Assembly (NCBI RefSeq): GCF_022045235.1
Contig: NW_027266277.1
Span: 12,338,001 to 12,402,000, forward strand
Source of the DNA: Haliotis cracherodii
Lineage: Eukaryota
Reading direction: 5' to 3'
Length of the DNA stretch: 64,000 nucleotides
Shown: positions 1-59,556 of the stretch, piece after piece
Layout: every line of letters starts with the position of its first letter
Position numbering within the stretch: the stretch's first letter is position 1
The notes under the pieces: model-generated
Seen by the model: the letters and a program-made list of their open reading frames with translations, nothing else
Database searches by the model: none
What the model was told of the DNA's origin: nothing
Made by a program: the position numbers and the translations under genes

Positions 1-869
1 CAGGTTTTATAAGAGTTTGAATGCCAAAGACAATCAAGTCTTTGATCAGCATTTAGAAGTTGATGGAACATGAAGACAAAACATTTTTTAAGGGTAACAA
101 CTTCTTTATTCTTTGTAACAATGTTTCAGGGCTACTTCTTGCCCCTTGGCCACATAGTGTTTTGCTTTCCCTCAAAGTATTAATTAAGAATAACTTAATG
201 TTAGGATACAAAAGTACAAATGCTATTGTGTTGTATTTTTCATAGTATATACTCATTTGTTATTTGCATTTTTGGGGTATTCCTGTCTTAATAAGTCATT
301 ATAATGTCATGGGTTTGTTATTTAGACTAGTCCATAGGAAAGTAACTTCTGTTTGAGTTGGATGTTTCTCATCCATTTCATTATTAGAATTAGAGCCAAA
401 GAAATTAACATTTATGTTTAACCTTGAATTATAAAATATTCTGATTTTGTTTCGATTTTTATCAACTTGGAATGTCCACTGATAATTTGGTGAAAGAAGA
501 CTGCCTATTGATTTGAGTTTGTTATCTTCATGTCATACTAAAAACAATTTCCTTGTCTAAACATTAGCAATAAAACACTGTAATGTAAAGCATTCCACTG
601 ACAGTGCATGGGAACTAGTATTATGTGTTTTAAGCAAGGGCATATCGTAGTTTTAAAAGCATTTTAAGATGGAGAAACAATATTTCAGTTTTATTTCAAA
701 CAAGTGGCCAAACTATCACTTGTGCCCCTACATAGATCAAAATATTATAATTTCACAACAAACAAAGATTTTATTGTTTTCATGCACTGTTATAAAAAGC
801 AAATGTGATATTTATATTCTAATTTGATAGAAGCAAGAAAATGACAGATTATTTGTTTGTTCAATATAT

Positions 870-1245
870 TTTGATTGAAAGCGATGGCTTTGCAGATAAA
901 ATATGTTTTCTCTTTGGGTTAGAAAGGGAGAATAATGTGAATAAAATAAGATAAAATAGACAACATGTATCTCACATGGTGTGTATCTCCTTAGATTTGG
1001 CTGATTTATTTTCATCAATGGTGCTGATCTGGCAAGTAAAATAAGTTTTGTCGTTGGTCCAGAAAAAGACAATAATCCTCATAAAAGATATAACAGACAT
1101 TTATCTCAGACGGTGTATATCTCCTCTGTTTCAGCCGCTTTGATCAAAAGTACTGATCTGGCAGGTAAAATTAAGTTTTGTCTCTGGTTCAGAAAGGAAA
1201 TAATCCTCAAATAAGATAAAACAGACAACAATTATGGTGTTTTTA
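870..1245. repeat. Degenerate tandem repeat, ~130-bp unit, ~2.5-3 copies
   Basis: CTGATCTGGCA at 1024 and 1153; AATAATCCTC and AAGATA(A/T)AA..GACA recur at the same spacing. Confidence 0.75.
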
Positions 1246-3085
1246 TTTCTAGGGGGGTAATACAGCAGTTCAATAGTAATTCAGTTTCATTAAAAAACAA
1301 CAAATAATATATTTTCAGTTAAAGGGGGCAAACAAATGGCTGTCTTGAGTGGCCCAATCATATCATAATTTCTTTGAGCTAAGATCATAGTGAGCTAATT
1401 TTATCTGGGGATTACCAAATTATGCAATAAACTGGTTCACTCAACAGCTTGCACAGAGGACAAAATCAGAGGACGGAGAGGTATTTTTACCAACTTGCCA
1501 TGCAAAGATCTAATCTATTTTCTAACCAAGTGCATATAGAGACCGAAATTGATTGTCTCTATACAGATGTCAATCCCCACAAAGACTACTTTGATCAATA
1601 TCGGATTAAGCACAAGGGTGTCAGATGAGATTGAGAAACTATGCTAGACACTTTCACTCATATATTCACTAGATCTCCTGCAGTGTTAGCCACAGCCATA
1701 AAAAATCTGAGATCATTTTAACATGCTATTCATCACACATAAGGCTTTAAAACAGGTTGTTTTTCCCCATTATGGCTTTCAAAATTAGGGTTAATAAAAC
1801 AGTAAATGGTTTTTGGAGGTGATGCTTCTGTTTAAAATTTGGCTGAAATTCATGGGAAATTTATTATTTTTTAATGGAAAAAGAAAGTTAACAAACTGTT
1901 TCATTTGAGACACTAATATGGGCAGGGTTTTTTGAAAAACTTTTAAGTTTAAGTACTGTTGGGGTTTCATACTGTCATCACTTCAATATTTCATTTTTTT
2001 AAAACTTCTTTAAATTGTATTAATGGATAATATATCAAATACTATGAGATCAGAAAAAATATAAATTCCTGATATTTTTATTTTATTTTAATTGCAATGA
2101 GTTTTTCCTAACAAGTATGAATATATTTTCAGATTCTGTATCAAAAGCAGTATATTCTTCTAAGCTTTGGTTCCATGTTCTGGCTTATGTTTTACAGAAA
2201 AAGTATAAAATAACAATTTAATCAGTTTTTTCACTTTGTAATATTTCTAAAATGATATGAACCAGATTGCATCGATTTCAGTTCTGTTCATTAAAACGAA
2301 ATATTCAAATCTCCTTACGCCATTCCCTTCAAAGCCCTCACTAATACATGTAACAATGCTAATCAGCTAAATCAAACAATATTTATTGCTTTTGTAAAAC
2401 ACTTCATTTAATGAAAAAAAATCACATCTCAGTAACCTGTTGATCCTTTTTGTGTCAGTGTAGCCAACTTTCAAGCAGCTAAATATTTATCCTATAAAAT
2501 AATTGATTTAACCATTTAATGTTATCAATTATTTCCCACCCAAACACATCCCCTATAACAGCAGTGATGCTGTTTCAACAATGACCTGACAACCGACCTG
2601 AACCAACCTCAGGGCATTTAACACTTAATTAATCACTTATTAATTACTGATGCATTCATTAATGACATGCCTAAGGGGCTTTGAATGGGAGACATTTAAT
2701 AGCACTTGGAGCCGATTTTCACCATAAATCTCAAGCACTGATTTCTCAGGATTCTACACCATTGAATAATTAAGCCTTTAACTTAATCATACCCCAAACC
2801 CATTGCATACTTAAGTCATATGCATATACAATTAAACGTTGCTCAATTCAGTCAATAATTCCATATTCATTAAAAAGATATCAGGTTGTAATTAATTTAG
2901 AAAATGTAGTCCTATGTACGAAGAGTAGGTGTACCTCCATATTTTATGATTTGATCAATATATGCATGCTTGGATACCTGTTTCGTGTGATGACTTGACA
3001 TGTGGAAGTTTTTGACTGCCTACTTCAAATTTTTATTGCGTCTAATGGCAGTCATCAATAATAATGAAGCGGTGAAGATCCATAC

Positions 3086-3133
3086 CTAACCGGTAACTTA
3101 TCACCTTGGTGACGTTACGAGTAAACCTTGGAA
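3086..3133 (-). CDS. Candidate 48-nt symmetric (phase 1-1) cassette exon (xPRFTRNVTKVISYRL)
   Basis: ATTTCAG acceptor and G|GTATGG donor; only the phase-1 frame is open, compatible with both upstream exons; weak pyrimidine tract. Confidence 0.25.
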
Positions 3134-3604
3134 CTGAAATTGTCGTCTTGCCGTATCATAAAGTACCACACCTCAAGTCAACGAGGCACATTGTTTGAAC
3201 AGTTCCTTTCAGATTCAAGTCCATATGTCACCATTATTGTCCCAACGATGAACGGGATTCTTTCAAATTGATAACGCAGCGCGTGCGCACGTGCTGTCAT
3301 TTTCACGAGCTTGGTAATCCCGTGCCCCTTCGTCTTACACATCGACCTGTCGTCGGTGCAAGACCCAGTTTAGCATATGTGGCTTTGAGAGCATAATAGT
3401 TGCTTGTACACGCGACTTGGGGTGGAGAATAAAACGGTATTGTTCCGAAACGACCTCCGCCGAAAACGTGCATCTGGCCATCTCAATAAAACATTACAAG
3501 AAATCCTACTTCTTTGAACATACTTGTCAGTTATGAATATCCACAATCTAATTATTGTGAAATGCGCTGCGGGAATTCGTGCCGACCGCTCCTGAGACTC
3601 TCAC

Positions 3605-3638
3605 CGACCCTCCTGTCAAAATCAGGCACCGATTCCAT
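3605..3638 (-). CDS. Candidate alternative first coding exon (MESVPDFDRRV), phase 1
   Basis: GGGATGG start context, 34 nt to a G|GTGAGA donor; same phase as the 37-nt exon. No recognised homology. Confidence 0.3.
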
Positions 3639-3945
3639 CCCTTTGCCGCTTGTGTCAACAAATAAACACCGCGTTGATTAACTGATAATTACACCGCGTT
3701 TCAATACATACATATATATTTAGACTGATCACATGTAAACACAGCGCATTGACCATGACACGATGTTCGGATGATAGAATTCATAACGACACACCAGGCG
3801 CTCGCTCTACAGTCTGGAACTTGGATGGAAACATATTTGAATGTCAGGCGACTGTCGCAGAATTCCCCTCAAAGTAAAGACATGTATATAAACATCCCAA
3901 CGAGGGGAAAGTTGGATGGCGTTATCTATCGGCAAATTAACTTAC

Positions 3946-3982
3946 CGTTGGGGAGTTTCCTAGCTTTGGATTTCGATCTCAT
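3946..3982 (-). CDS. PRDM16: First coding exon of a Prdm3/16 (MECOM/MDS1-EVI1, PRDM16, hamlet-like) PR-domain zinc-finger transcription factor; rest of gene lies beyond the left edge
   Basis: Minus strand reads ATG AGA TCG AAA TCC AAA GCT AGG AAA CTC CCC AAC G|GTAAGT = MRSKSKARKLPN plus a perfect donor. Matches recalled N-termini of PRDM16 (MRSKARARKLAK) and MECOM (MRSKGRARKLAT), whose first coding exon I recall is also 37 nt, phase 1. No downstream domain exon is visible in the window. Confidence 0.85.
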
Positions 3983-4009
3983 GTCTTGTTGCGTTGATCG
4001 AATGTTGTT

Positions 4010-4090
4010 CAGAAGTGATAAGCATTAGATTGACAGAACAAAAACACCACGGACAATTCTCCCGTAACACCTGGGCGCATGCGCATTGGC
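4010..4090 (-). promoter_or_regulatory. Core promoter of the Prdm3/16 gene (Inr-like, NRF1-type palindrome, CCAAT box)
   Basis: Inr-like TCACTTC (minus, ~4016) about 35 nt upstream of the ATG; GCGCATGCGCA at 4075-4085; CCAAT (plus ATTGG) at 4085-4089; inside a CpG-rich block. Confidence 0.6.
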
Positions 4091-5673
4091 TTAAGACACC
4101 ACATTGACTCTTCTAAAAAACTTTTAAAAGAAATTAAGCGTTGAGTGGATGGGATAGAGGCGATTGTTGGGTCGCGTGTGCCTCCCCCGATCTCCCCCTC
4201 CTAGCTGCACGAGACAAAGGAGGGGTCTGGTTTTGAGAGCTGACAGGAACGCGAGGGGGTTTGATATGAAAGATGGGGCGATATTGGTAGACGTAAGGCT
4301 GGTATGGCGACACTTTATTCTTTCATTTGAGTCTATAAACTGATCATGATGGTGTATTGTCTGGCTGTTAGAAAGCGATATCTGTGTTGTTTACCACGCT
4401 TTAGTCGCTCCAAGACGAGCTCGAAGTGTTTTATGTCTTCAACTAGGGACTGAGCTCGACGCTTTGTAAACAGCACGAGAACGGGACGACAGCTCGCCCA
4501 GTCGTGCAACCACCTGCTAATGGAAACAAAAGGCACAAAATTCGATCAGAAATTCTTTCGCGTTTTCCGTGTAAATAAACTTGTCTGCTAAATATTTGGC
4601 GACACCTTCTAGTCCATTGACTTTATAAACTTAAATTGTTAGCATTGAGTTAGAGCTCTACCGCTCGCTGCTGAAGAGACGGGAACTTGTCGTCTGCTCG
4701 CGGCCGCTTTCAAAATTAATTAGCGCGTTAAAGAGAATATAATGAGTTTCCGATAGTCTTTGTGAAACGGGTTCTCTATATTGCTGGGCTAGTCGATCTC
4801 TGAATAATCGCGAGGCTTCTGCGGGTGCCTACCTTGCCTAAAACGAGTTTCTTAGGGGAGGGAAAACGTCCCGGTGATGCTAGAGCACCAGTCGAAATGT
4901 CATCTCCCCTTTTACACAACGCGTAATGTCACTCTCTGATTTTGATGAATTTTTAATGATTATTTGAAATTCTAAAGATCTTATCTTTGATTGGAGACAG
5001 CGTTAAGAGGGTTGTTAAGAGCGGTTGCCTCTTTAAACAAGAATTAATTTCGAGTAGAGACCTCGCCATGTTTAAGCTATTGTTGCTAGACACACTGTTT
5101 GATTGAGGCAATAATTAGCCAATTGTGATAGCCATTTCTGAACATTATTTCAAAATATGTTAAGCAGTCACGGTGACTAGATTTTCGCTCTTTTTTCAGT
5201 TTAAATCGAATATGATCGCATTTCATGTAAGATTATGTACACTGTTGAATTTCAATTTAGACGTTAAATGTCTCTGAATTATTTAATTTTGATGTTTATT
5301 AAAATATTACATGTACTTATCCTATGTTGCGTTAATAATTAAATGAGTAAAGTCCAACATACATGACGTATTCTTAATAAAACAATTCTGCATTTGAAAT
5401 AGTTATAGAATAATACATGCGCTCCGATTGTGTATCGGAGTGATTGTACATGCATCTGTTAAAAAGGGAATATGGTCTCAATGTGTAGACTTTGTAATTT
5501 GTGATTGTGTTAATTAACACACTGTCCCTGGTTAATGAGGGGAGTGTTCAACTGTTAGACACGACAAAGCGGGGTTTGAAGGGCTGGACGTAAACTTGCT
5601 TGATGCTGGGACGGTCAAGTTGCCAGATTACAGTACCCCCTTTTGACGTCCGCCATTACGGTGAGGGAGAGCC

Positions 5674-5698
5674 GGGGGGGGGGGGGGGGGGGGGGGGG
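5674..5698. repeat. Poly-G run (25 nt)
   Basis: Direct reading. Confidence 0.95.

Positions 5699-5804: not shown

Positions 5805-5808
<4 letters not shown>

Positions 5809-5866
<58 letters not shown>
5809..5866. repeat. (CT)n microsatellite
   Basis: Direct reading. Confidence 0.95.
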
Positions 5867-5873
<7 letters not shown>

Positions 5874-56077: not shown

Positions 56078-56365
56078 TCAATGAATTGTTCTTGACCTCT
56101 TGACATCATAACCCTTCAAACCGACGGTGTCAGTAAACGAGCCATATTCAGTGCCACTTCCTGGTTTTTGCGTTAAACCCGAAGTACCTCTTTGAGCTAA
56201 CAATCCGTCTTGAAGAGGCTTCAGTGTGTGTTTCAAGGGTCCAGCAGATCTTGAAATCACCCGAGCAGTCGTCTTAGACTTGATGTTCTTGGATTTTGTA
56301 GGATTTGATTTGATTTTTGTCTCCGGTATGTCCTGTCCTTGTAGGTGTCGCCTGTTGCCTTTGAT
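56078..56365 (-). CDS. Probable frameshifted C-terminal extension of the same protein
   Basis: Alternative frame open for ~96 codons (KIKSNPTKSKNIKSKTTARVISRSAGPLKH...RTIH*) with similar K/S/T/G composition; joined by removing one base from the A5 run at 56314-56318. Confidence 0.45.
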   Translation of the reverse strand: MKGNRRHLQGQDIPETKIKSNPTKSKNIKSKTTARVISRSAGPLKHTLKPLQDGLLAQRGTSGLTQKPGSGTEYGSFTDTVGLKGYDVKRSRTIH

Positions 56366-59300
56366 CTACTTTGGTACCAGCGTGACCTTGATTTGGCGCA
56401 TAATCATGACCCGGTGAACCTGTATCACTCCGCAAACCTTCGTGACCTCGCACTCCAACGTGACCTCGTACAGCAATCTGACTTGGTACATCAACATTAC
56501 CTTCAGTGTGACCACGAACACCATTGTAACCTTGACCACGTACATCATCTTGACCTCTGGCACCATCTTGACCTTTGACACCATCTTGACCTAGCAAACC
56601 TTCGTGCGTTCGCACTTTATCGCGACCTCGTACATTAACTCGTACACCAGTACGACTTCGCGCACCGTCGTGACCTTGATCTCGTACATAACCATGACCT
56701 TGTACATCAGCTCGGCGTATTACATTATCGTGAGGTCGTACATCAGCTCGGCGTATTACATTATCGTGAGGTCGTACATCACCTTGACCTCGTGCACCAT
56801 TGTGACCTTGACCTCGTACATCATCATGACCTTGTACATCACTGTGACCTCGTGCACCATTGTGACCTTGACCTCGTACATAACCATGACCTTGTACATC
56901 GCCGTGACCTCGTAATTCATCGTTCCGTGGTTCAGCTGGACGTCTTTGCTGCGACCTTGTCCGGTCATTCTTTGTACTTTCGGATTTTGGAACTGGTAGT
57001 GTCTTCTTATGCACATTATTCTCAGATAAACCACCAGTTTCCTTGTGTTCGGTGATATGCAATTTCATTTTGTTCCCTAATCTGCTAAGGTTCTCCGTCA
57101 TGCCTAAAGACCCTGTCTTCATTATAGCCAATCTGTCCACAGCGTGTAGCCTCCCCTTATTTCTAGCCTGCTGCAGTGTATATTCAGACAGCCCAGCATG
57201 GAGACTTTCCTTTCTTCTGATTCCAAGATTTCGTAAACTCCGCATCTGAAGAGTCGTAAGCCGTTTCCCGATGTCAGCCTTGGCCTTGATCGTTTTGTGT
57301 GATATGTTTTCTTGTCCCTTGATTCTGTCAACAAACCGTGGTCCAGTAATACGTTCTGGTTGACCTCCTAGCTTCAACACGTCCATGCGTGTCTGCTCAG
57401 CGTTGGCTGTTTCATCGCTGGCGTTTCCTTTTGTTGAGGTCAATGATTTAGCGTCCCGGACCTTGGAAATAACTTTGGTGTCGTGGAGTAGATCATATTT
57501 TGTTTGATGCCTACGTGAAAGGAAGAGATGGATTTTGGTAATATTTGCTCGCTTTCGATTACGCTGTTTTAAAAGATCACGTTTTTGGCCTGTGAACATC
57601 TTTTTGTCCGATTTTCTTTTCATACTCTTTGGAGTCAGTTTGTTTATCTTCTGTATTTTAATATTTTTAAAAGCGCCAATATTCTGATTCTTTACCCCTG
57701 CTCTATCGGTAGCATCTTCTTTCGCTCCAATATTTAGCTTCATCGCAGTATTGCGTTGTTGACCTGAGAAGTCCCCGGTGTCCAATTGTCTATTTTCACT
57801 CTTAGTTTTTGAGGTAACAAGTGGCTGTTTTGTTTCAGTTTCTTCAGAATGGACATGACTCTTAGTCTTTGACGTAGCAAGTGCTTGTTTTCTTCCAGTG
57901 TCATCAGCATGGACATGACTCTTAGTATTTGACGTAGCAAGTGGTTGTTGTCTTCCAGTGTCCTTTACATGGACATGACTCTTAGTCTTAGACGTAGCAA
58001 GTGGTTGTTGTCTTCCAGTGTCCCCAACATGGACATTGCTCATAGTCTTTGACGTAGCAAGTGGTTGTTTTGTTTCAATGTCTTCAACTTGGACATGACT
58101 CTTAGTATTTGACATAGCAAGTGGTTGTTGTCTTCCAGTGTCCTTAACATGGACATGGCTCATAGTATTTGACGTAGCAAGTGGCTGTTGTCTTCCAGTG
58201 TCTTCAGCATGGACATGGCTCTTAGTATTTGACGTAGCAAGTGGCTGTTGTCTTCCAGTGTCTTCAGCATGGACATGGCTCTTAGTATTTGACGTAGCTA
58301 GTGGCTGTTGTCTGCCAGTGTCCTCAGCATGGACATGACTCTTAGTATTTGACGTAGCAAGTGGTTGTTGTCTTCCAGTGTCATCAGCATGGACATGGCT
58401 CTTAGTATTTGACGTAGCAAGTGGTTGTTGTCTTCCAGTGTCATCAGCATGGACATGGCTCTTAGTATTTGACGTAGCAAGTGGTTGTTGTCTTCCAGTG
58501 TCATCAGCATGGACATGGCTCTTAGTATTTGACGTAGCTAGTGGCTGTTGTCTGCCAGTGTCCTTAACATGGACATGGCTCTTAGTATTTGACGTAGCAA
58601 GTGGTTGTTGTCTTCCAGTGTCATCAGCATGGACATGGCTCTTAGTATTTGACGTAGCAAGTGGTTGTTGTCTTCCAGTGTCATCAGCATGGACATGGCT
58701 CTTAGTATTTGACGTAGCTAGTGGCTGTTGTCTGCCAGTGTCCTTAACATGGACATGGCTCTTAGTATTTGACGTAGCAAGTGGCTGTTTGGTTTCAGTG
58801 TCTTCAGCATGGACATGGCTCTTAGTATTTGACGTTGCAAGTGGCTGTTTTGTTTCAGTGTCTTCAGCATGGACATGGCTCTTAGTCCTATTCAGTCCAC
58901 CCCCTTCTCGCTGTTCTGTAAGACGCTGTGGGGACAAACTGAGGCGTTCTTTATTGGTTAACTGTTTCCCAATGTTAGCTAGTTTCAGTTTCGACCCCGT
59001 CTGTGGGAATCGTGTCTGTGATAGTTTACCAGTCAAACGTTTTGGACTCTTTGTGGATATGCGAGGTAATATACCCAAAGCTTTCATACCAACCCCTGCA
59101 TATTTGTTCAGTCTACCCGACTTCAATGGAAACTCCTTCCTGGCCGTGTCAGACGTTCTGTCTTTTGTCCTAAGGTTCATCTTTAACAAAGCCGGTTCAT
59201 CAGCATTTTTGTCACGAACAAAGGTAAGGGGAGACATGTTAGAGTTCACCTTCTTGTGCATCCACGGGTTGAACCCATTACCGGAATATATTCTATTATT

Positions 59301-59556
59301 GCGCAACTTAGAGCGACGATAACCGTGGGATTCTTTCATACGAGACCCAAAGCCGGAAGGTCTGAATCCTTTGCTGTTTGGTCTGTAGGATGGGTGTGAG
59401 TGATGTTTGTTGGGTGTGACAGAGGTCCACGTATGTCGGTGCCAGGAAGTGACGGAGAAGAAGATGTAGATGACACACGTCAGTAGCACGACCTACGTCA
59501 CGTACTGGCATGTCTGCAGGAACCGGAAACACAGACAGGGGGCGTATCGCGCATAA
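56274..59556 (-). CDS. Large coding exon of an uncharacterised basic low-complexity repeat protein with N-terminal signal-anchor; in-frame TAG at 59493-59495 (possible null allele, pseudogene or assembly error)
   Basis: 1071-codon open frame, mostly non-repetitive outside two arrays. Acceptor TTCTCATTCTACTTCCAG at 59557 is in phase with the upstream micro-exon. Hydrophobic VVLLTCVIYIFFSVTSW; K/R-rich linkers; no recognisable globular domain. Confidence 0.8.
56380..56915 (-). repeat. Coding 18/24-bp repeats encoding V-R-G-H-x-D-type Gly/His hexapeptides
   Basis: Recurrent TGACCTCGTACATC / TGACCTTG on the plus strand. Confidence 0.9.
57798..58886 (-). repeat. Coding tandem repeat, 60 bp x 18 (TKSHVHADDTGRQQPLATSN)
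   Basis: Exact 60-bp periodicity with no indels. Confidence 0.97.

What the first reader, a model, noticed from the sequence alone, without database searches (positions are those of the whole stretch)
3946..3982. Hidden 37-nt first exon of Prdm3/16 with vertebrate-like peptide, length and intron phase
Seen: MRSKSKARKLPN followed by G|GTAAGT, too short for the ORF track. Recalled knowledge: human PRDM16 and MDS1/MECOM start MRSK(A/G)RARKLA on a 37-nt phase-1 coding exon followed by a huge intron. Inference: this basic micro-exon and its boundary predate the protostome-deuterostome split, implying an under-appreciated function (NLS, histone-tail-like ARK motif, or marker of the PR-plus isoform). 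Automated annotation would easily miss it.
Basis: partly seen in the sequence, partly recalled or inferred. Interest (0 to 1): 0.8.

Follow-up and report, generated by a model that had tools for sequence, protein, structure and literature searches.

The report
Abalone Prdm3/16 first coding micro-exon
The 37-base stretch is a real, transcribed first coding exon of the black abalone MECOM/PRDM16 gene; its 12-residue start matches the human peptide that recruits the NuRD chromatin complex, so the finding is correct but mostly extends known biology to molluscs.

Summary
On the minus strand, window 3982-3946 reads ATG...AACG|GTAAGT (MRSKSKARKLPN plus one base). A degenerate pattern for this peptide hits once in the 1.18-Gb genome.

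Spliced contigs in three RNA-like runs end exactly at 3946. They continue with 30 letters that map uniquely 63,992 bases downstream, at a phase-1 acceptor opening the first PR-domain exon. Further downstream lie the remaining PR exons, six plus three C2H2 fingers and two CtBP motifs. This is the RefSeq Haliotis cracherodii 'MECOM-like' gene.

The same start (MRSK[S/G/A][K/R/I]ARK[L/F]) is already annotated in bivalves, a brachiopod, amphioxus, hemichordates, echinoderms and vertebrates. Human PRDM16 intron 1 also falls between c.37 and c.38.

The function is not unknown. Residues 1-12 of human PRDM3/16 bind RBBP4 of NuRD as a histone-H3 mimic (PMC6379669). The contact residues M1, R2, K4 and K9 are kept here.

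'Hidden' is only partly true. The RefSeq abalone isoforms I could see start at another first exon (MPFSS...); isoforms X2 and X4 could not be viewed.

Verdict: a correct call and a new member of a known kind, of modest interest.

The parts
3946..3982 (-). Coding part of exon 1 (exon 1a) of the abalone Prdm3/16 (MECOM-like) gene. It encodes MRSKSKARKLPN plus the first base (G) of codon 13. Length 37 nt, phase 1.
   Evidence: Sequence. The peptide pattern is unique in the genome. RNA-like contigs end exactly at 3946 and continue into exon 2.
3983..4222 (-). 5' untranslated part of exon 1, as far as the contigs reach (their ends lie at 4213-4222). It holds four out-of-frame upstream ATGs, at 4104, 4086, 4080 and 4025, all with a pyrimidine at -3. 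The main ATG has G at -3.
   Evidence: Contig pieces 3946-4213, 3946-4215 and 4015-4222 in runs X2, X3 and X1. uATG analysis. The exon is single copy in the genome.
3940..3945 (-). Splice donor GTAAGT of intron 1.
   Evidence: Loose ends of spliced contigs begin exactly here.
1..3945 (-). First 3,945 bases of intron 1. The whole intron is 63,992 nt, C14:12277954-12341945, and it contains the alternative first coding exon MPFSSDSSPSSGS at C14:12294875-12294914.
   Evidence: The loose-end consensus maps uniquely to C14:12277924-12277953, just after the acceptor ttctacttcag. The MPFSS exon was located.

Best explanation
This is the true first coding exon of the PR-domain-containing isoform of the single black-abalone Prdm3/16 (MECOM/PRDM16/Hamlet-family) gene. 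Transcription starts at or beyond window 4222 on the minus strand. The exon carries about 240 nt of 5'UTR and 37 nt of coding sequence. Its donor at 3946 is spliced across a 63,992-nt intron to a phase-1 acceptor (G|AG gives Glu). That acceptor opens the exon encoding the acidic linker and the start of the PR/SET domain. These steps are shown. By inference, the encoded N-terminus MRSKSKARKL acts as in human PRDM3/PRDM16. The free Met1 amine, Arg2, Lys4 and Lys9 would dock, like the histone H3 tail (A-R-T-K...A-R-K), into the acidic top face of the WD40 protein RBBP4/Caf1-55. That would tether the NuRD deacetylase/remodelling complex (and possibly other RBBP4 complexes) to sites bound by the zinc fingers. 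Isoforms starting at other first exons lack this handle. These are MPFSS..., which keeps the PR domain, and MDIWS..., which lacks it. Promoter choice would therefore decide whether the factor can recruit RBBP4.
For: Exon and junction: contigs in X1, X2 and X3 (two coded organisms, three studies) cover 3946 to 4213-4222. Each carries the loose end CAACGCTCTCAGCTTCAGCATCACCCTCCT at 3946. That string maps once, to C14:12277924-12277953, directly after ttctacttcag. The DNA run X15 is collinear with no such end. Exon 1 is single copy, so a retrocopy does not explain the joint.
Gene identity: PF21549 hits at C14:12228873-12229049. The exon-2 peptide PVYIPEDFPIPTDFELRES aligns to camel PRDM16 and meerkat MECOM at E 8e-16 and 7e-19. 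The last exon holds four proximal and three distal C2H2 fingers plus PFDLS and PLDLS motifs. Its best hits are named MECOM/PRDM16. RefSeq H. cracherodii MECOM-like proteins sit on a contig of 16,056,623 bases, the same length as C14. Pfam finds PR plus C2H2 domains.
Peptide: Tegillarca and Mytilus start MRSKSKARKL, oyster MRSKSKARKF, scallops MRSKSIARKL. Lingula, amphioxus, hemichordates and a sea star have MRSKGKARKL, an urchin MRSKAKARKL, and vertebrates MRSKARARKL or MRSKGRARKL.
Function in mammals: residues 1-12 bind RBBP4 with KD about 3 uM, a K4A peptide does not bind, and contacts run through Met1, Arg2, Lys4 and Lys9 (PMC6379669).
Partner: an RBBP4 orthologue lies at C23:29.026-29.036 Mb. 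Its exons are near-identical to PDB RBBP4 chains, including 6bw3/6bw4, across the segments holding E231 and N277.
Against: The runs are labelled only 'RNA? (a guess)', and contigs cannot give expression level or a true 5' end. Only the first 30 letters beyond the joint were shown. The RefSeq isoforms visible for four Haliotis species start with MPFSS..., MKYIR... or MDIWS..., not MRSK, so this may not be the dominant start. Four upstream ATGs could reduce initiation at the MRSK codon. Position 6 is Lys here and Arg in human. No binding has been measured for any invertebrate peptide.
Confidence: 0.85

Rival explanations
1. The exon is real, but the conserved basic peptide serves another purpose, for example a nuclear localisation signal or a degradation or modification site, rather than RBBP4/NuRD docking.
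For: The peptide is lysine- and arginine-rich, like a monopartite NLS. No invertebrate binding data exist. The review PMC7761934 lists the cellular function of the NuRD (RBBP4) interaction as unknown.
Against: Conservation is strictest at exactly the RBBP4 contact positions M1, R2, K4 and K9, and at the extreme N-terminus, which the free-amine contact requires. An NLS would tolerate shifts in position and composition. The RBBP4 segments checked are near-identical in abalone.
Confidence: 0.1
2. The exon is transcribed but acts mainly as a 5' leader. Ribosomes are captured by the upstream ATGs, or start at a later Met (the MKSES Met in exon 2), so the MRSK peptide is rarely made in abalone.
For: There are four uATGs in the 240-nt leader, and one uORF overlaps the main ATG.
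Against: All the uATGs have a pyrimidine at -3 and no G at +4, whereas the MRSK ATG has G at -3. Ten of the first twelve codons have been kept since the mollusc-vertebrate ancestor, and the phase fits exon 2. A mere leader would not show this.
Confidence: 0.04
3. The match is a chance ORF next to a chance GT, or the joined form comes from a processed DNA copy rather than RNA.
For: Short ORFs followed by GT are very common. The runs are not on record as RNA.
Against: The peptide pattern occurs once in 2.4 Gb of searched strand and the control gives none. Exon 1 is single copy. The DNA run shows no joined form. The join lands on a canonical acceptor in the right phase.
Confidence: 0.01

Closest known systems
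Human and mouse PRDM3 (MDS1-EVI1) and PRDM16 N-terminal residues 1-12, the RBBP4/NuRD-binding H3 mimic (Ivanochko et al., NAR 2019, PMC6379669; PDB 6BW3 and 6BW4)
   Same: The peptide sits at the extreme N-terminus of the PR-plus isoform. Residues M1, R2, S3, K4, A7, R8, K9 and L10 are identical. It is encoded by a 37-nt, phase-1 first coding exon before a very long intron (human c.37|c.38). It is absent from PR-less isoforms.
   Different: Position 5 is Ser (Ala or Gly in vertebrates), position 6 is Lys (Arg), and positions 11-12 are Pro-Asn. Binding is untested. Abalone also has an annotated PR-plus isoform that lacks the peptide (MPFSS start).
Annotated Prdm3/16 orthologues of other lophotrochozoans and non-vertebrate deuterostomes (Mytilus, Crassostrea, Tegillarca, scallops, Lingula, Branchiostoma, Ptychodera, Acanthaster)
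   Same: The N-terminus is the same MRSK[S/G/A][K/R/I]ARK[L/F], followed by an acidic linker, a PR domain and two zinc-finger clusters.
   Different: In those species public gene models already start at this exon. In the Haliotis models I could see, they do not.
N-terminal NuRD-interaction motifs of FOG1, SALL1/4 and BCL11A
   Same: These are short basic peptides at the very N-terminus of zinc-finger transcription factors, and they occupy the H3 groove of RBBP4.
   Different: They have an adjacent Arg-Lys pair without the intervening small residue. PRDM3/16 and this abalone peptide keep the H3-like R-S/T-K spacing.
Histone H3 tail (residues 1-10)
   Same: It has the R2-(T/S)3-K4 and A7-R8-K9 pattern and is bound by RBBP4 and by Drosophila Nurf55.
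   Different: H3 starts with Ala after Met removal. In the crystal structures the PRDM peptides retain Met1, and its free amine makes a contact.

Membership tests
Prdm3/16 subfamily (MECOM/PRDM16/Hamlet) | N-terminal PR/SET domain | tested here: met
   PF21549 hits at C14:12228873-12229049 with E 2.3e-6. On RefSeq P0129 the match covers residues 66-169 with E 6e-22. Exon 2 aligns to PRDM16 and MECOM PR domains.
Prdm3/16 subfamily (MECOM/PRDM16/Hamlet) | Two separated C2H2 zinc-finger clusters (proximal and distal three) | tested here: met
   There are six proximal fingers across exons 5-7 and three distal fingers in the last exon. Vertebrates have seven proximal fingers by my own knowledge, and I did not count them here.
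Prdm3/16 subfamily (MECOM/PRDM16/Hamlet) | CtBP-binding PxDLS-type motifs between the finger clusters | tested here: met
   PFDLSKK and PLDLSKK are present in the last exon. The role of CtBP is taken from PMC7761934. Binding was not tested.
Prdm3/16 subfamily (MECOM/PRDM16/Hamlet) | Closest relatives are named Prdm3/16 orthologues | tested here: met
   The top 120 hits are MECOM, PRDM16, EVI1 or hamlet proteins, including Platynereis PRDM3/16. No formal phylogeny was built.
RBBP4-binding N-terminal H3-mimic peptide of PRDM3/16 | Located at the extreme N-terminus, with Met1 followed by Arg2-Ser3-Lys4 | tested here: met
   The sequence is ATG AGA TCG AAA, with an in-frame stop 13 codons upstream.
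RBBP4-binding N-terminal H3-mimic peptide of PRDM3/16 | Lys9 contact and the Ala7-Arg8-Lys9-Leu10 segment | tested here: met
   The abalone peptide reads ...A R K L at positions 7-10. The contacts are described in PMC6379669.
RBBP4-binding N-terminal H3-mimic peptide of PRDM3/16 | Physical binding to RBBP4, dependent on Lys4 | not testable with these tools
   This needs ITC or pull-down. Only the presence of a conserved RBBP4 orthologue was shown.
RBBP4-binding N-terminal H3-mimic peptide of PRDM3/16 | Encoded on a 37-nt, phase-1 first coding exon | tested here: met
   Abalone has 37 nt and phase 1. Human PRDM16 intron 1 lies at c.37|c.38. In camel, ray and amphioxus, alternative or mis-started models diverge from the MRSK forms exactly at residue 13. 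Other invertebrate genomes could not be fetched.

The most novel reading that the evidence does not exclude
Abalone uncouples two things that vertebrates lose together. Two alternative first coding exons end in the same phase with the same base: MRSK... (ancient) and MPFSS... (Haliotis-specific and fast-evolving). They would give PR-domain isoforms with or without the RBBP4/NuRD handle. A third exon (MDIWS...) gives the PR-less form. That would be a three-state promoter switch for co-repressor recruitment that has not been described for PRDM3/16.
Probability: 0.3. Interest if true: 0.45.

Novelty: new member of a known kind. Interest (0 to 1): 0.3.

Why it matters
The finding shows that the NuRD-recruiting, histone-H3-like start of PRDM3/PRDM16 dates back at least to the last common ancestor of molluscs and vertebrates. 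Its 37-base phase-1 exon followed by a very long first intron is shared by abalone and human. This argues that RBBP4 docking is a core, ancestral part of how this developmental and leukaemia-linked transcription factor family works. It gives invertebrate models a defined 12-residue element to mutate. Practically, it flags that abalone gene models, and probably those of Priapulus and spiders, may lack or under-represent this distant micro-exon. Such models would mis-state the protein's true N-terminus. It does not reveal a new mechanism.

Tried and rejected
- The CCAAT plus GCGCATGCGC element at window 4075-4089 first looked like a core promoter. The RNA-like contigs run through it to 4213-4222, so it lies inside the transcribed leader.
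- The sigma-70 promoter and terminator scan is meaningless for an animal gene.
- Rfam found nothing in the window.
- A paper search for PRDM16 'c.37+' found nothing. 'c.38-' succeeded.
- I tried twice to see all 27 members of the Haliotis protein cluster, to learn whether RefSeq X2 and X4 start with MRSK. The same 15 members were listed each time.
I therefore could not read the RefSeq gene span or the exon 1 boundaries in other animals.
- The search of earlier findings had nothing near this place.
- I left the big representative-protein search and the third word search unused. Ecdysozoan and cnidarian status would not change the verdict.
Exons were searched one by one, only exon lengths were summed, and full-length comparisons used RefSeq proteins returned by the tools.

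Full report
**Observation**

The minus strand of window 3982-3946 reads ATG AGA TCG AAA TCC AAA GCT AGG AAA CTC CCC AAC G, followed by GTAAGT. An in-frame stop lies 13 codons upstream. A degenerate DNA pattern for M-R-S-K-x-[KR]-A-R-K-L matches once in the whole 1.18-Gb assembly, at this site. The reversed control pattern matches nowhere.

**Where the window lies**

The window is G000:C14:12338001-12402000. RefSeq proteins named 'histone-lysine N-methyltransferase MECOM-like / PRDM16-like [Haliotis cracherodii]' are recorded on a contig of 16,056,623 bases. That is the length of C14. Their sequence matches the exons found here. The genome is therefore black abalone, which agrees with earlier notes of this scan.

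**Downstream gene, all on the minus strand of C14**

A Pfam PR-domain search of the genome hit C14:12228873-12229049. I fetched 200 kb to the left of the window and mapped the exons one at a time.

| Exon | C14 coordinates | Length | Notes |
|---|---|---|---|
| 2 | 12277953-12277688 | 266 nt | Acceptor ttctacttcag\|AG GAG GGT. Encodes an acidic linker, then PVYIPEDFPIPTDFELRES... |
| 3 | 12229043-12228909 | 135 nt | PR domain |
| 4 | 12218786-12218669 | 118 nt | PR domain |
| 5 | 12210196-12210043 | 154 nt | Zinc fingers begin |
| 6 | 12208100-12207992 | 109 nt | Starts at a cag\|cag tandem acceptor |
| 7 (last) | 12207484-12205469, then TAA | 2,016 nt | Four proximal fingers, PFDLS and PLDLS CtBP-type motifs, three distal fingers, acidic tail |

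- Exon 1 ends with G and exon 2 begins with AG, so the split codon is GAG and the frame is kept.
- Summing exon lengths gives 2,835 nt, or 945 codons, for the MRSK form. Only lengths were summed.
- The same sum with the RefSeq first exon gives 946 aa, the length of RefSeq isoform X1. This validates exons 2-7.
- Pfam on RefSeq X1 finds PRDM2_PR/SET plus C2H2 arrays.
- The last exon's best database relatives are all MECOM, PRDM16, EVI1 or hamlet proteins.
- Exon 2 aligns to camel PRDM16 and meerkat MECOM at E 8e-16 and 7e-19.

**Is exon 1 used?**

- The run search found 14 small runs from four studies, labelled 'RNA?', each holding 0.39-0.46 of the sampled words. That is roughly the share an exon of about 280 nt would give. 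It also found larger DNA-like runs holding 0.78.
- I laid X1, X2, X3 and X15 on window 2300-5600. In X1, X2 and X3 the contigs cover only 3946 to 4213-4222.
- Each of those contigs has a loose end exactly at 3946, with the consensus CAACGCTCTCAGCTTCAGCATCACCCTCCT on the plus strand.
- That string occurs once in the 206-kb region, at C14:12277924-12277953, immediately after the exon 2 acceptor. Intron 1 is therefore 63,992 nt.
- The DNA-like run X15 is collinear across the site and has no differences in the 37 coding bases.
- Exon 1 is single copy, so a processed DNA copy does not explain the joined form.
- Caveats: these are contigs, not reads. They show presence but not level, strand or the true 5' end, and only 30 letters past the joint were displayed.

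**Leader**

Window 3983-4222 holds four upstream ATGs. All are out of frame and all have a pyrimidine at -3. The MRSK ATG has G at -3. Translational control is plausible but untested.

**Conservation of the peptide**

All N-termini below come from proteins returned by the searches.

| Taxon | N-terminus |
|---|---|
| Tegillarca, Mytilus | MRSKSKARKLTH |
| Crassostrea virginica | MRSKSKARKFTK |
| Scallops | MRSKSIARKLPH |
| Lingula | MRSKGKARKLTQ |
| Branchiostoma | MRSKGKARKLAK (behind an annotated upstream extension) |
| Ptychodera | MRSKGKARKLPK |
| Glandiceps | MRSKGKARKLAQ |
| Acanthaster | MRSKGKARKLTK |
| Diadema | MRSKAKARKLTN (internal in its model) |
| Vertebrate PRDM16 | MRSKARARKLAK or MRSKARARKLPK |
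| Meerkat MECOM | MRSKGRARKLAT |

- Similarity stops after residue 12-13 in every case.
- Alternative or mis-started models diverge from the MRSK forms exactly at residue 13. This holds for camel-family P0148 against P0145, Narcine P0141 against skate P0140, and Branchiostoma belcheri P0136 against B. floridae P0135. It is what a phase-1 boundary after 37 nt predicts.
- For human, the migraine SNP rs2651899 is named PRDM16 c.38-18977T>A (PMC12310283). Intron 1 therefore sits between c.37 and c.38.
- The Priapulus and spider models seen lack the motif. I did not resolve whether that reflects loss or mis-annotation.

**Function**

It is in fact published.

- Ivanochko et al. (PMC6379669) showed that residues 1-12 of human PRDM3 and PRDM16 bind RBBP4 of the NuRD complex with a KD of about 3 uM.
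- The peptide lies in the histone-H3 groove and makes contacts through the Met1 amine, Arg2, Lys4 and Lys9. A K4A peptide does not bind. The PR-less isoforms lack the peptide.
- All of these contact residues are present in abalone. Arg6, a weak contact in the human structures, is Lys here.
- The abalone genome encodes an RBBP4/Caf1-55 orthologue at C23:29.026-29.036 Mb. Its exons are near-identical to PDB RBBP4 chains, including those of 6bw3/6bw4, across the segments that hold Glu231 and Asn277.
- The segments GHQKEG/YGLSW and HKDEIFQV are also visible in its open frames.
- Binding in abalone is inferred, not shown.
- I found no paper in the library that discusses this motif outside mammals.

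**Was it hidden?**

- The visible RefSeq isoforms of H. cracherodii, H. rufescens, H. rubra and H. asinina start with MPFSS..., MKYIRGS... or MDIWSLAENL....
- The MPFSS exon (ATG at C14:12294914, 40 coding nt, donor CAG|GTAGGT, also phase 1 ending in G) lies inside intron 1, 17 kb upstream of exon 2.
- Its peptide differs at 5 of 13 residues between H. cracherodii and H. asinina, while the last coding exon is 95% identical to the H. asinina protein. It is therefore young or weakly constrained.
- H. cracherodii isoforms X2 and X4 were never listed. By length order they could be 945 and 944 aa, which is what MRSK forms would be. That is a guess.
- The exon is thus at least under-represented in abalone annotation, but it is routinely annotated in other phyla.

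**Verdict**

The element is an orthologous instance of a known, structurally characterised co-repressor docking peptide on a known exon structure. The one possibly new point is that abalone may make a PR-plus isoform without the peptide.

Noticed in passing
G000:C14:12294875-12294914 (minus), inside intron 1, outside the window: Alternative first coding exon MPFSSDSSPSSGS, used by RefSeq isoforms X1 and X3. It has 40 coding nt, phase 1, and ends in G like the MRSK exon. A possible acceptor (ttgtgattacag) 26 nt upstream of its ATG would keep the MRSK frame open, making a 66-nt symmetric cassette. No such isoform was seen.
   Followed up: partly
G000:C14:12211973-12212030 (minus), outside the window: PR-less alternative first coding exon MDIWSLAENLAEVDRESYS (RefSeq X6), between PR exon 4 and zinc-finger exon 5. 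It mirrors the vertebrate EVI1 / deltaPR-PRDM16 arrangement. All three alternative first coding exons end in phase 1 with G.
   Followed up: partly
G000:C14:12208100-12208103 (minus), outside the window: The tandem acceptor cag|cag at exon 6 explains the one-serine difference between RefSeq isoforms X1 (946 aa) and X3 (945 aa).
   Followed up: yes
window 3086-3306: The RNA-like run X3 holds a 225-nt contig inside intron 1. The stretch is single copy in the genome. It could be pre-mRNA, DNA carry-over or a small separate transcript.
   Followed up: partly
window 4075-4089 (minus): CCAAT is immediately followed by the palindrome GCGCATGCGC (NRF1-site-like). It lies within the transcribed 5' leader rather than upstream of it. 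Two of the four upstream ATGs fall inside this element.
   Followed up: partly
window 56274-59489 (minus): A 1,071-codon open frame with about twenty tandem copies of a 20-residue unit (TSNTKSHVHADDTGRQQPLA-like), flanked by basic and Gly/Arg-rich repeats. Whether it is coding is unknown.
   Followed up: no
G000:C3:18.58-18.74 Mb and C3:26.06-26.20 Mb: Two clusters of many strong PR-domain exon hits (E 1e-25 to 1e-27). This suggests tandem expansions of another PRDM subfamily in abalone.
   Followed up: no
window 5674-5698 and 5808-5867: A G25 homopolymer and a (TC)30 microsatellite lie about 1.5 kb upstream of the exon.
   Followed up: no
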